From the NCBI RefSeq assembly GCF_016432865.1, contig NC_067398.1, forward strand, positions 370,388,001 to 370,452,000: a stretch of DNA of 64,000 nt, given 5' to 3'. The notes below the pieces were generated by a model, which saw nothing but the letters and a program-made list of their open reading frames with translations, searched no databases and was not told the DNA's origin. The stretch is from Antechinus flavipes (taxonomy: Eukaryota). The translations under genes and the position numbers were made by a program. Each line of letters starts with the position of its first letter. Position 1 is the stretch's first letter. Below are positions 4,714 through 49,086 of the stretch, piece by piece.

Positions 4714-4841
4714 NNNNNNNNNNNNNNNNNNNNNNNNNNNNNNNNNNNNNNNNNNNNNNNNNNNNNNNNNNNNNNNNNNNNNNNNNNNNNNNNNNNNNNN
4801 NNNNNNNNNNNNNNNNNNNNNNNNNNNNNNNNNNNNNNNNN
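4714..4841. other. assembly gap
   Basis: run of N. Confidence 1.
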
Positions 4842-5407: not shown

Positions 5408-5564
5408 NNNNNNNNNNNNNNNNNNNNNNNNNNNNNNNNNNNNNNNNNNNNNNNNNNNNNNNNNNNNNNNNNNNNNNNNNNNNNNNNNNNNNNNNNNNNN
5501 NNNNNNNNNNNNNNNNNNNNNNNNNNNNNNNNNNNNNNNNNNNNNNNNNNNNNNNNNNNNNNNN
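5408..5564. other. assembly gap
   Basis: run of N. Confidence 1.
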
Positions 5565-6287
5565 AATTGAATTTTTTATATGAGACTCTGAAATTAATCT
5601 CTAGAGGTAAAAATCATCCTTTCCAAGATTGCCTCATTGTAGTTTGGCAGTAACTTTATTCTTCACTGCTATGCCAGTGGAACTCAAGTTTTGGCTGCTT
5701 CTAATTAAACAAGAATGGCCGGATTCCAGTATGGGCTGGCAACATGCTGCATGTTTATCATCTGAGGACCAGCTTCCCTAAATCTGGGGAAGCTGATGAC
5801 ACAGATTGGCCACAGGGCAATTAATTTTTTGGCCACAATAACTCATTAAGATCGCCAGCTAAAACAGAGAAGGGCCTTGATTGGTGTCAGCAGAAAGAAT
5901 ATGCATAGCCCTGAAATGACAGGATTTTGAAGTGTTAAAGTAAACTATGGCAAACTCATTGGGAAATATTTGGGACCAAAGGAGAGTTTCTGATATTTCT
6001 TAATAAAGCTAGTCTGCACATGATTAACATTAGTGTGGGACTAATTCTTTGTAGTAGTCAAGCTTTCTAACCCATCAGTTTGCATCTAGACCAGATGTAG
6101 AAAATGAGGGGGGAAAAAGCAAAACTATAAACTTAAAACTTCCTATTTTGCCTCAATTACCTGGTGGTATTCTTGAGTTGTTTCAGTTGTGTCCAACTCT
6201 TTGTGACTTTATTTGAGTTTTTCTTGGCAAAGATATTGGAGTGGTTTACCATTTCTTTCCCCATTCTACAGATAAGGAAACCTCAGT

Positions 6288-6368
6288 TTCTTCTTCTTCT
6301 TCTTCTTCTTCTTCTTCTTCTTCTTCTTCTTCTTCTTCTTCTTCTTCTTCTTCTTCTTCTTCTTCTTC
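6288..6368. repeat. (TTC)27 / (GAA)27 trinucleotide microsatellite
   Basis: perfect 81-bp run; source of the poly-Leu ORF 6164..6445. Confidence 1.
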
Positions 6369-6513
6369 ACCCTAACAATACCATTGCTCACCCCCCACAA
6401 TCATACAACAAAGATACCCCATTCCAATCCTGTCCTACACAATAATTACCCACCGAATCAAATAATTCAACAGCAGTAATAACTTCAACTTCCCCAGTTA
6501 TCATAAATCAAAA
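6367..6513 (-). pseudogene. ND6: NUMT: mitochondrial NADH dehydrogenase subunit 6 fragment (C-terminal half)
   Basis: Minus strand in the vertebrate mitochondrial code reads FWFMMTGEVEVITAVELFDSVGNYCVGQDWNGVSLLYDCGGWAMVLLGW (49 codons, three TGA=Trp). This matches the ND6 C-terminal motif ...D..GV..LY..G.W..V..GW. The plus strand has mtDNA-like C/A-rich composition. Confidence 0.9.
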
Positions 6514-6829
6514 CCTCAGTTAAGCAAACAAACTTAAGTGATTTTGTCCAGATTTAAACTCTGGTCTTCCTCAAAAGAACACAAGAAGTACCTGACTCTA
6601 TTGTCTTTCTCCCAAATACACTACAGGTAGGATGGCTCCCCTGCCTTCTGCTCCCCTATACCCCCACACCCTCATACCCCAATTGGAAACCACAGTCCAG
6701 CATGCCATACGAAATTGTGAATATGGGCTCACATCATCCCTCCCAACACCTTTCTCCATTTTGAGGATGGAGAAGGAGAACCAGATCTGGGAACCTCAGG
6801 GAAACTTAGGGAAGGAAACATGCTGTAGT

Positions 6830-7020
6830 AGAAAGAACTCTAGTTTTGGAGGCAGTGGAGTGGCTACATGAACTTTTTAAATATGTGGCCATGGGTTCCT
6901 TCAATACCTCCATCCCTCGTTTTATCATCTGTAAAATATGATAGCTGAAATATCTACTCTACAGGATTGTTGATTATTTGCTAACCTTAAAGTAAATCCT
7001 ATACAAATGTCAGTTCTTAG
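6830..7020 (+). mobile_element. MIR fragment
   Basis: ccatccctcgttttatcatctgtaaaatatgatagctg...tactctacaggattgttg...gctaaccttaaagtaaatcctatacaaatgtcagtt. Confidence 0.55.
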
Positions 7021-7174
7021 TAATAAGTGGCACTGCCCCTACCCCGCCTTCCCCACCTGACTATGTGGAACTTTGCATTTATCATCTTCTTTATTTTGCA
7101 TGTGGGTTTAAAGTCTGCCATGGGGCTTGAAGCCTGAAAACTGCTTCTATTTAGTTTTCTTATTCTTTTGCCCA

Positions 7175-17725: not shown

Positions 17726-17885
17726 TTTTTTTTTTTTTTTTTTTTTTTTGCTGAGGCAATTGGGATTAAGTAACTTGCCCAGAGTCACACAGATAAAAAG
17801 TGCTAAATGTCTGAGACCAGATTTGAATTCAGGTCCTTCTGACTTCAGGGCTGGTGCTCAATCCACTGTGTCACCTAGCTGCCCC
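17726..17885 (-). mobile_element. WSINE1 SINE
   Basis: T24 tail + gctgaggcaattgggattaagtaacttgcccagagtcacac...gacttcagggctggtgctcaatccactgtgtcacctagctgcccc. Confidence 0.9.
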
Positions 17886-21993: not shown

Positions 21994-22245
21994 NNNNNNN
22001 NNNNNNNNNNNNNNNNNNNNNNNNNNNNNNNNNNNNNNNNNNNNNNNNNNNNNNNNNNNNNNNNNNNNNNNNNNNNNNNNNNNNNNNNNNNNNNNNNNNN
22101 NNNNNNNNNNNNNNNNNNNNNNNNNNNNNNNNNNNNNNNNNNNNNNNNNNNNNNNNNNNNNNNNNNNNNNNNNNNNNNNNNNNNNNNNNNNNNNNNNNNN
22201 NNNNNNNNNNNNNNNNNNNNNNNNNNNNNNNNNNNNNNNNNNNNN
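21994..22245. other. assembly gap
   Basis: run of N. Confidence 1.
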
Positions 22246-26291: not shown

Positions 26292-26458
26292 NNNNNNNNN
26301 NNNNNNNNNNNNNNNNNNNNNNNNNNNNNNNNNNNNNNNNNNNNNNNNNNNNNNNNNNNNNNNNNNNNNNNNNNNNNNNNNNNNNNNNNNNNNNNNNNNN
26401 NNNNNNNNNNNNNNNNNNNNNNNNNNNNNNNNNNNNNNNNNNNNNNNNNNNNNNNNNN
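26292..26458. other. assembly gap
   Basis: run of N. Confidence 1.
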
Positions 26459-29294: not shown

Positions 29295-29501
29295 NNNNNN
29301 NNNNNNNNNNNNNNNNNNNNNNNNNNNNNNNNNNNNNNNNNNNNNNNNNNNNNNNNNNNNNNNNNNNNNNNNNNNNNNNNNNNNNNNNNNNNNNNNNNNN
29401 NNNNNNNNNNNNNNNNNNNNNNNNNNNNNNNNNNNNNNNNNNNNNNNNNNNNNNNNNNNNNNNNNNNNNNNNNNNNNNNNNNNNNNNNNNNNNNNNNNNN
29501 N
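29295..29501. other. assembly gap
   Basis: run of N. Confidence 1.
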
Positions 29502-47583: not shown

Positions 47584-49086
47584 GTAAGTACCTCAGAAGG
47601 AAAGGGACCTTAGAAGCCATCTGGCCTAACCAATCTCATTTTGCAGATGAGTACACAAAGGTTAATTTATTTGCCTGAGATCACATAGGTAGCAAATGGT
47701 AGATCTGGAATTTGAACTTTGGTCATGATAGTTTGATCCATATTATGGATTCTTCCAAATCGTATATTTTCCTTGCCCTTGTATAGAATTCAGTTAGATG
47801 CTGGGTCATTTTTAAGTACAATTGGTAAGGAAATGTGCAGTCAATCAAATAGCAATTATTAAGCATCTACTGCCATGCACTGCATTACATTTGGGGGATA
47901 CAAAGAAAGACAAAAATAAACAAAAAATAAAAAAAAAAACACACAACAACAACAACAAAAAAGTTTATTGTCTAATTTGGGAGACAGCATAAAATCAAAA
48001 ATAAATATTATATGAGAAAGTAAGATAAATGTTAAGGATGTGTAAAATTCTGTTTAATTTAGCTTGCTCCTCTCAAATGAGTATTTTGGAGGAGGAAAGA
48101 GATGAATTGACTTATTTTGGAGAGACAATATCAAAAAGAAAAAGGACAATTTATTGAACCATTGTAATTGACTGAACACTACAACTGAATCAAGTTTGGG
48201 AGCAAAAGAGCCAGTTACAGTATCAGGAACTTCCTCTGCTCAATGTAAATTCTTCACTACAAATAATGGAAACATTTCAGTTATTCTTTATTCCAAATTT
48301 ACTTTCAATTCTTAAGTTTCTGTTTAATCAAAGGGATTCACTGTATCATATTTCTTTTGAGTCCTCCCTTCTATAATGTTGGGCATATAACAGGTGTCCA
48401 ATAAATTCTTATTGGTTTTTGAAACAAAAAGACTATGCCTTTCGATAATAGAGGAAGGGGAGATTTAAGATAGTTATCTGGATTGTTCAGACTGCTATGT
48501 AGGGGGAAAAAGATGACTTTCTGCATCTGATTTTTCAAGCTTAATAGTATTCAGTAATTATCTTAACTATAGAATTACTTTGATCTTACCTTTCTTGTAT
48601 AGCTATTCCTAAAAGTGCTTTGTTCCTTATTCTATAGCAGGATCATCTGTTTCCCCAGTAACAGAACTGAGGAACATGAATGTCTTGGAAATTGAGAGTA
48701 AAGTTTTCATTTCAATTCTACTTGGTTTTTTTTTTTTTTTTAATGAGCTAGGGTTCAATGTGATGGTGTTGTGAATGATTATAATTTTCTCTGTTTCCTT
48801 CTTCTCCACTTACCAATAGATACCTAGAAGTTATCTAAATTCCATCTGCACTTTAATATCATACCAGGGAGGAATAACATTGAAATAGAAAATTATTTAA
48901 TCAGGACAGACTAGAAAAACCAAGCTTTTCAAATCAATTCTATATCTCAGCATTCATTTGAAAATGAATTCTTTCATGATTCCTATTATAAAAGTCTGAG
49001 TAAACTCCTCTAAAATCTACTTTTCTGAAGCAAGAAAAGAGATCTCTTCTTTCCTTGAATCAAAAAAAAAAAAAAAAAAAAAAAAA

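What the first reader, a model, noticed from the sequence alone, without database searches (positions are those of the whole stretch)
6278..6521. Mitochondrial ND6 fragment built like a retroposed RNA: sense NUMT + (GAA)27 tail + perfect 11-bp TSD, inserted into a MAR1 SINE
Seen: on the minus strand the order is aactgaggttt (6521-6511), then 49 ND6 codons open in the mitochondrial code (FWFMMTGEVEVITAVELFDSVGNYCVGQDWNGVSLLYDCGGWAMVLLGW), then (GAA)27, then aactgaggttt again (6288-6278). The target reads gctt|aact, a TT|AA-type site. Removing the insert and one repeat restores a continuous MAR1. Established: NUMTs are generally DNA fragments captured at double-strand breaks, usually without TSDs or tails, whereas TPRT products have a TSD, sense orientation and an A-rich tail; such tails can evolve into GAA repeats. 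Inference: a LINE-mediated retrocopy of an L-strand mitochondrial transcript (RNA-mediated NUMT), or a NUMT captured with an RTE/L1-style tail. The intact frame suggests a fairly recent insertion.
Basis: partly seen in the sequence, partly recalled or inferred. Interest (0 to 1): 0.82.

Follow-up and report, generated by a model that had tools for sequence, protein, structure and literature searches.

The report
Young mitochondrial insert with retroposon hallmarks
A recent ~140-bp piece of mitochondrial sequence sits inside a marsupial SINE, flanked by a duplicated target and carrying a pure GAA-repeat tail; this is the signature of a LINE-1-type insertion and hints, without proving, that mitochondrial RNA was copied into the nucleus.

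Summary
On the minus strand the order is an 11-mer (6521-6511), 147 nt open only in the mitochondrial code, a perfect (GAA)27, then the same 11-mer (6288-6278). All of it lies inside a MIR/Mar1-type SINE.

Public reads support a mitochondrial origin. Contigs at 20x to about 1,160x nuclear depth, varying by sample, match 6381-6510 at about 90-99%. The copy looks young: few differences from the mtDNA of two close organisms, 13/130 from a third.

The name ND6 could not be confirmed by any database. It rests on strand composition, the open frame (P about 0.006) and remembered motifs.

The nick site (TT/AA, about 0.9% of positions), the 10-11-bp duplication and the tail's side all fit LINE-1-type target-primed insertion. 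Three things weaken the RNA claim:
- Orientation is uninformative, because both mtDNA strands are transcribed.
- The tail is not poly(A), and a pure GAA tract is hard to evolve in a young insert.
- The 3' junction and the empty site remain unverified. Sister-organism contigs stop matching 2 bp outside the repeat, unexplained.

Tailed, TSD-flanked mitochondrial retrocopies were already proposed in humans (PMC11727581). The scan holds one other NUMT note in this genome, with no tail or TSD in its title.

The parts
6511..6521 (-). 5' copy of the duplicated target (aactgaggttt), preceded by tt (TT/AA site)
   Evidence: A contig of run X17 with no differences bridges 7100 to 6441 across this junction (record 16).
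6367..6513 (-). Mitochondrion-derived fragment, putatively ND6 sense strand (49 codons open in the mitochondrial code). Its first 1-3 letters overlap the target repeat (microhomology).
   Evidence: Translation and composition. Shuffle test. High-depth, sample-variable contigs match 6381-6510/6512. 6367-6380 was masked by the reads tool and is assigned by reading frame only.
6288..6368 (-). Perfect (GAA)27 tail on the 3' side of the fragment
   Evidence: TRF: 27.0 copies, 100% matches. It is the only such array in the window. It could not be checked in reads because of the mask.
6278..6288 (-). 3' copy of the duplicated target (aactgaggttt); first letter shared with the last GAA unit
6522..6650 (-). 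5' half of the host MIR/CORE-type (Mar1-like) SINE
   Evidence: Alignment with two other copies in the window. Other copies in reads resume matching at 6524-6552 (table 5).
6165..6277 (-). 3' half of the host SINE (RTE-like tail region, very high copy)
   Evidence: Summed depth at 6217-6263 is about 47,000-83,000 times single-copy depth in all four runs (table 2).

Best explanation
This is a young, lineage-specific NUMT made by a LINE-1-type, endonuclease-initiated target-primed insertion.

Proposed steps:
1. The window's + strand was nicked at ...CAGTT/AAGC.
2. The freed ...TT-3' end primed on the A-containing 3' tract of an RNA. Reverse transcription ran through the (GAA)n tract into an ND6-sense (L-strand) mitochondrial RNA. 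That RNA was either a truncated, tailed decay fragment or was reached by template switching from a GAA-bearing RNA.
3. The second strand was cut 10-11 bp away, giving the target duplication.
4. The 5' end was joined through 1-3 nt of microhomology (ttt).

Shown: the anatomy, the mitochondrial origin, the youth of the insert, and recent L1-type activity in the lineage. Inferred: the nick, the RNA template, and the nature of the tail at the time of insertion.
For: - The 10-11-bp perfect duplication is unique in the window.
- The boundary falls on TT/AA, which occurs at only 0.9% of positions in this window.
- The tail lies on the one side where the nicked strand's ...TT-3' runs straight into the complement of the tail.
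- Mitochondrial origin: contigs at about 20x (X17), 57x (X22) and 1,160x (X19) nuclear depth match 6381-6510. The host SINE's depth ratio varies less than twofold across the four runs.
- Youth: the high-depth contig of the window's own organism differs at one listed site (6433). A second organism differs at four, a third at 13 of 130. Paralogous NUMTs differ by 9-18%.
- Recent L1-type retroposition in this lineage: a SINE with a perfect A24 tail at 17726-17885.
- Polyadenylated decay fragments of mt-Nd6 and other mt mRNAs exist in mouse (PMC5435911).
- Tailed, TSD-flanked mitochondrial retrocopies have been proposed in humans (PMC11727581).
Against: - The tail is (GAA)27, not poly(A), and there is no AATAAA. 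L1 is known to need a 3' A-tract (from established knowledge, not tested here).
- In a young insert a pure GAA array with sharp edges is hard to derive from poly(A).
- Orientation carries no weight, because both mtDNA strands are transcribed.
- The fragment ends inside the presumed ORF, not at a known RNA 3' end.
- The orthologous contigs of organisms G and H stop matching at 6524. They carry 9 unmatched letters where a simple empty site would match (records 24 and 32).
- The 3' junction and the repeat are unverified because the reads tool masked them.
- This is one locus only.
Confidence: 0.4

Rival explanations
1. The event was L1-initiated but the mitochondrial piece entered as DNA. An abortive target-primed event copied only a short simple or A-rich tail. 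The open intermediate was then closed by end joining that captured a free mtDNA fragment.
For: It has the same TSD, TT/AA site and tail side as the main explanation. NUMTs are generally taken to be DNA-mediated in animals (PMC1925129; PMC11393654). The 1-3 nt microhomology at the 5' junction fits end joining equally well.
Against: It needs two coincident processes. Nothing in the locus demands DNA, and filler capture of about 140 bp at L1 5' junctions is uncommon (from general knowledge, not tested here).
Confidence: 0.25
2. The insert arose by endonuclease-independent break repair. A break at or beside a fragile GAA/TTC tract was repaired by end joining with capture of mtDNA (or cDNA). The 11-mer was duplicated by fill-in of staggered ends or by short templated synthesis from the far side of the repeat.
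For: - The tail is a pure microsatellite rather than poly(A).
- Sister-organism contigs diverge from the window 2 bp outside the repeat, which a simple TSD model does not predict.
- The restored SINE has 5-7 extra letters just at the site.
- The 21 nt of the fragment next to one repeat copy resemble the 21 nt of SINE next to the other copy (12/21 with a 7-mer in register, P about 0.004 post hoc). This could reflect homology-guided annealing.
- In humans, mitochondrial inserts belong to the class without TSD or tail (PMC5110952).
Against: The TT/AA boundary (0.9% base rate), a perfect 10-11-bp duplication enclosing both parts, and the tail on the side TPRT predicts would all have to be coincidence.
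Confidence: 0.25
3. It is a secondary copy: a retrocopy or duplication of another nuclear NUMT locus that already lay next to a GAA repeat, rather than a direct transfer from the mitochondrion.
For: Each of the four genomes holds at least 12-15 single-copy-depth contigs matching this same segment. A NUMT burst in dasyurids is published (PMC10764098).
Against: Those paralogues differ from the window by 9-18%, whereas the high-depth mitochondrial contigs of the closest organisms differ at only 1-4 listed sites.
Confidence: 0.05
4. It is an assembly artefact: a mitochondrial read or contig wrongly joined into the scaffold.
For: The 3' junction and the repeat could not be checked (mask 6279-6380). 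The best-matching run may be the sample the assembly was made from.
Against: A contig at nuclear depth (30.9) with no differences runs from unique flank through the 5' junction 70 nt into the fragment (record 16). The copy differs from the organism's own high-depth contig at 6433. The 11-mer duplication is not what a chimeric join would produce.
Confidence: 0.03

Closest known systems
NUMTs (nuclear mitochondrial DNA segments), including the published NUMT burst in Dasyuridae
   Same: It is a short mitochondrial fragment in nuclear DNA, inside a retroposon, unreadable under the nuclear code. Many paralogous NUMTs cover the same region in these genomes (PMC10764098).
   Different: Typical animal NUMTs show end-joining junctions without a TSD or tail. 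This one has a 10-11-bp TSD, a TT/AA boundary and a 3' simple-repeat tail.
Class 1 templated sequence insertion polymorphisms / L1-mediated processed retrocopies (PMC5110952)
   Same: TSD of 5 bp or more, insertion at a T-rich/A nick site, a single 3' tail next to the downstream TSD copy, and 5' truncation with microhomology.
   Different: The tail is (GAA)27 rather than 10-40 A. There is no polyadenylation signal. The source is mitochondrial, whereas in humans such inserts fall into class 2 (no TSD, no tail).
Putative retrotransposed mitochondrial RNAs reported by RetroSeeker in human (PMC11727581)
   Same: Mitochondrial gene sequence with a TSD and a 3' tail, read as an L1-mediated route to NUMTs.
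   Different: Those have standard poly(A) tails and include whole rRNA or mRNA units. This is an internal ~140-nt fragment, presumably of ND6, with a GAA tail, in a marsupial. Both rest on sequence anatomy alone.
Chimeric retrocopies formed by L1 template switching (U6-L1 type)
   Same: They would explain a 3' part unrelated to the 5' part within one TSD.
   Different: Here the 3' part is only a simple repeat, so no second parental RNA can be identified. Recalled from memory, not tested.

Membership tests
NUMT | Lies in nuclear DNA, continuous with nuclear flanks | tested here: met
   A contig at single-copy depth with 0 differences spans 7100-6441 across the 5' junction. The flanks are a SINE present at tens of thousands of copies plus unique sequence. 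The 3' junction was not testable because of the mask.
NUMT | Sequence homologous to the organism's mitochondrial genome | tested here: met
   The evidence is indirect. Contigs at 20x-1,160x nuclear depth, with a ratio that varies by sample, match 6381-6510 with 1-13 differences. No named mitogenome was available to align.
NUMT | Assignable to a mitochondrial gene (here ND6) | tested here: inconclusive
   There was no ND6 hit in PDB, Pfam, 1.84 billion protein representatives or the ESM Atlas. Support comes from the G+T-rich, C-poor open strand, the open frame (P about 0.006) and remembered ND6 motifs only.
L1-type target-primed retrocopy (class 1 TSIP) | Target-site duplication of 5 bp or more enclosing the whole insert | tested here: met
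   The duplication is 10-11 bp and perfect, and the 11-mer is unique in the window.
L1-type target-primed retrocopy (class 1 TSIP) | 3' poly(A) of 10-40 nt, usually after a polyadenylation signal | tested here: not met
   The tail is a perfect (GAA)27 with no flanking A-run. There is no AATAAA or ATTAAA in the fragment.
L1-type target-primed retrocopy (class 1 TSIP) | Insertion at a 5'-TTTT/A-3'-like nick site | tested here: inconclusive
   The nicked strand reads AGTT/AAGC. The TT/AA core is present (0.9% of positions in the window) but the two upstream T are not. The boundary is ambiguous by one base.
L1-type target-primed retrocopy (class 1 TSIP) | Derived from RNA (processing marks, natural RNA 3' end) | not testable with these tools
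   Mitochondrial genes have no introns, and both strands are transcribed. The fragment ends inside the presumed ORF. No mitogenome or RNA data could be aligned.
L1-type target-primed retrocopy (class 1 TSIP) | Empty site in relatives with a single copy of the target | tested here: inconclusive
   The orthologous contigs of organisms G and H (1.0-1.4% diverged) match only from 6524 and carry 9 unmatched letters.
End-joining NUMT (class 2 TSIP) | No TSD and no tail; microdeletion, microhomology or filler at the junctions | tested here: not met
   A TSD and a tail are present. Only the 1-3 nt microhomology at the 5' junction fits this class.

The most novel reading that the evidence does not exclude
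This is a true RNA-mediated NUMT in a mammal. A truncated L-strand (ND6-sense) mitochondrial RNA left the organelle and was reverse-transcribed into the germline by LINE-1 from a purine-rich tail that was not poly(A) at birth. That would mean either that L1 can prime on GAA-type or heteropolymeric tails, or that it switched templates from a GAA-bearing RNA onto mitochondrial RNA. It could also link part of the dasyurid NUMT burst to L1 activity.
Probability: 0.3. Interest if true: 0.65.

Novelty: new member of a known kind. Interest (0 to 1): 0.45.

Why it matters
Animal NUMTs are textbook DNA-mediated break patches. An RNA/L1 route has been proposed only from a few human cases. A young, cleanly bounded example in a genome with both a NUMT burst and active L1 offers a test case. 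If a census of this genome finds many tailed, TSD-flanked NUMTs, part of the burst could be attributed to retrotransposition. On its own, this single locus does not settle RNA versus DNA. A pure (GAA)27 tract in what is probably an intron also bears on repeat instability.

Tried and rejected
Attempts to name the gene:
- PDB phmmer and Pfam scans of the stop-free 39-aa piece, and of the 49-aa mitochondrial-code translation, gave no ND6 hit.
- HMMER against 1.84 billion representatives gave only 8 repetitive, unrelated proteins.
- The ESM Atlas feature search gave only low-score lectin-like hits.
- The word-index protein search was not run. Its length window (0.55-1.75x) excludes full-length ND6.

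Attempts to read the sister-species allele:
- An exact look-up of ten ATG-started ORFs around the site, meant to fetch the sister-species contigs, found none in the collection.
- Two joints landing at 6524 in X19 and X22 (table 5c) were considered as empty-site alleles. They were rejected because their intervening letters are those of other SINE copies, not a 1%-diverged orthologue.
- Fetching the orthologous intron from other marsupial assemblies through the host gene's protein was not possible.

Hypotheses rejected:
- An RTE-driven origin, because stringent LINEs need their own 3' end (general knowledge).
- A tail that evolved slowly from poly(A), judged unlikely because of the insert's youth.

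Full report
WHAT IS THERE

Read on the minus strand, the locus is:
- SINE sequence ending ...tgtttgctt.
- aactgaggttt at 6521-6511.
- 147 nt at 6513-6367, overlapping that repeat by up to 3 letters.
- A perfect (GAA)27. TRF places it at 6288-6368 with 27.0 copies and 100% matches.
- aactgaggttt again at 6288-6278.
- The rest of the SINE.

The 11-mer occurs nowhere else in the 64-kb window (0.10 expected, no shuffle reaches two). One letter (6288) belongs equally to the last GAA unit, so the duplication is 10-11 bp.

Under the standard code the frame has three stops. The other five frames are closed. The open strand is T58 G49 A33 C7, with no C at third codon positions. A frame this long stays open in 127 of 20,000 shuffles.

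IS IT MITOCHONDRIAL, AND IS IT ND6?

No named mitogenome could be searched with these tools. The following gave nothing related:
- PDB and Pfam scans of the stop-free 39-aa piece and of the 49-aa translation.
- A full HMMER pass over 1.84 billion protein representatives (the 8 hits are repetitive unrelated proteins).
- An ESM Atlas feature search.

The useful evidence comes from public reads. I laid contigs of four runs from four coded organisms (F, G, H, A) on 5700-7100.

Unique flank has depth 27, 49, 15-18 and 31 in the four runs. Contigs matching 6381-6510 reach:
- about 542 in X17 (organism F);
- about 57,000 in X19 (organism G);
- 1,036 in X22 (organism H, record 29, 13 differences in 130).

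That is 20x, 1,160x and 57x the nuclear depth. The host SINE's depth ratio stays within 47,000-83,000 in all four runs. An excess that is large and differs by sample is what organelle DNA gives. These matches, and those of paralogues, all stop at 6510-6512, the edge of the target repeat. This is as expected if the window holds a piece cut from a longer mitochondrial sequence.

The gene name ND6 rests on three things. The open strand is G+T-rich and C-poor; by established knowledge, only ND6 among vertebrate mitochondrial protein genes is read from that strand. The frame is open. I also remember ND6 motifs in the fragment (EVEV, F-x-SVG, LY-x-x-G-x-W...GW). This last point is a lead from memory, not a test.

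AGE

All this comes, table 3.
- At the listed variable sites covered by organism F's high-depth contig (about 6405-6470), it differs from the window only at 6433.
- F's nuclear contig ends at 6441. If the contigs come from 31-letter words, this implies a further difference at 6471 (inference).
- Organism G's high-depth contigs differ at 6433, 6451, 6455 and 6475.
- Organism H's differ at 13 of 130.
- At least 12-15 contigs at single-copy depth per genome match at 82-91%. These are older paralogous NUMTs, in line with the published NUMT burst in Dasyuridae, which names the yellow-footed antechinus (PMC10764098). An earlier scan note names that species for this genome.

The window's copy shares states with the F and G mitochondrial lineages against H and against the paralogues, for example at 6471 and 6480. 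So it is a direct and recent transfer. It probably postdates the split from H's mitochondrial lineage.

JUNCTIONS IN READS

X17 (organism F) has a contig with no differences that runs from beyond 7100 through the 5' junction to 6441 (record 16). This run may be the assembly's own sample, so it may not be independent.

The reads tool masked 6279-6380 as repeat. The GAA tract and the 3' junction therefore remain unverified.

The orthologous right-flank contigs of G and H are 1.0% and 1.4% diverged over 577 letters. Both begin 9 letters left of 6524, and those 9 letters do not match the window (records 24, 32). A simple empty site, with one copy of the 11-mer plus aa, would have matched. So G and H differ from the window starting 2 bp outside the repeat.

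Two further oddities sit at the same spot:
- The restored SINE has 5-7 more letters between TGTTTG and TTTCC than the two other copies in the window, and other copies in the reads resume matching only at 6524.
- The 21 nt of the fragment next to one repeat copy resemble the 21 nt of SINE next to the other copy. The match is 12/21, including TTCCCCA in register, with P about 0.004 post hoc.

MECHANISM

Three features fit L1-type target-primed insertion.
- The duplication is 10-11 bp.
- The boundary on the strand that would be nicked reads ...CAGTT/AAGC. TT/AA occurs at 0.9% of positions in this window.
- The tail is on the one side where the ...TT-3' primer runs directly into the complement of the tail.

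The lineage has recent L1-type retroposition with pure A tails: a SINE with a perfect A24 at 17726-17885. Unchecked scan notes on young L1 copies say the same.

These features match two of the three criteria of class 1 templated insertions (PMC5110952). The poly(A) criterion is not met.

Tailed, TSD-flanked mitochondrial retrocopies have been proposed in humans (PMC11727581). Polyadenylated decay fragments of mt-Nd6 and other mt mRNAs are documented in mouse (PMC5435911). A truncated tailed ND6 RNA is therefore a plausible template.

- Orientation says nothing. Mitochondrial primary transcripts cover almost the whole genome (PMC5435911 abstract); that this holds for both strands is from established knowledge.
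- The fragment ends inside the presumed ORF, not at a natural 3' end.
- A pure (GAA)27 with sharp edges, in an insert that differs from current mtDNA at only one or two of the listed sites, is unlikely to have evolved from poly(A). The tract was probably GAA-like at birth or came from another source.

I therefore rank the explanations as follows:
- L1-type event with an RNA template: 0.40.
- L1-initiated event with captured mtDNA: 0.25.
- Endonuclease-independent break repair at or beside a fragile GAA tract, with staggered-end or templated duplication: 0.25.
- Secondary copy of another NUMT: 0.05.
- Misassembly: 0.03.

COMPARISON AND VERDICT

It is a NUMT; its membership features are met, apart from a named gene match. 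It works like a class 1, L1-mediated retrocopy, but it fails the poly(A) criterion and should not be filed as a proven one. The idea of RNA-mediated NUMTs through L1 is already in the literature. This is therefore at most a new member of a proposed kind: the first noted in a marsupial, and unusual for its GAA tail. It is a good, checkable locus rather than a discovery. The decisive data are a mitogenome alignment, the sister-species site, long reads, and a genome-wide census.

Noticed in passing
window 6515-6523 versus contigs of runs X19 and X22 (records 24 and 32): The orthologous contigs of two sister organisms match the window from 6524 rightwards at 98.6-99%. Each starts with 9 letters that do not match, where a simple empty site would. 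The pre-insertion sequence is therefore not what the TSD model predicts, or those lineages changed at the same spot.
   Followed up: partly
window 6257-6277 and 6490-6510: The SINE sequence beside one repeat copy and the mitochondrial sequence beside the other match at 12 of 21 positions, including a 7-mer (TTCCCCA) in register. P is about 0.004 post hoc. This may be homology that guided the joining, or chance.
   Followed up: partly
window 6381-6512 (reads of four organisms): Each genome has at least 12-15 single-copy-depth contigs matching this same mitochondrial segment at 82-91%. They are older paralogous NUMTs that extend beyond both ends of the window's fragment. This is consistent with the published dasyurid NUMT burst.
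   Followed up: partly
window 17726-17885, minus strand: A tRNA-derived short SINE (WSINE1-like, named from memory) ends in a perfect A24 followed by (GA)n. It is evidence of recent L1-type retroposition with pure poly(A) tails in this lineage.
   Followed up: partly
window 49062-49086: A perfect A25 run, possibly the tail of another young retrocopy. The element and its TSD were not identified.
   Followed up: no
window 6782-6799: A third, partial copy of the MIR-core motif around the target (CAGATCTGGGAACCTCAG, 83% like 6269-6286), 260 bp from the SINE. It is probably an unrelated old MIR fragment.
   Followed up: no
window 4714-4841, 5408-5564, 21994-22245, 26292-26458, 29295-29501: Five N stretches totalling 911 letters. 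Two lie within 1.6 kb of the insert, so the nearest exons, if that is what they are, could not be used to name the host gene.
   Followed up: no
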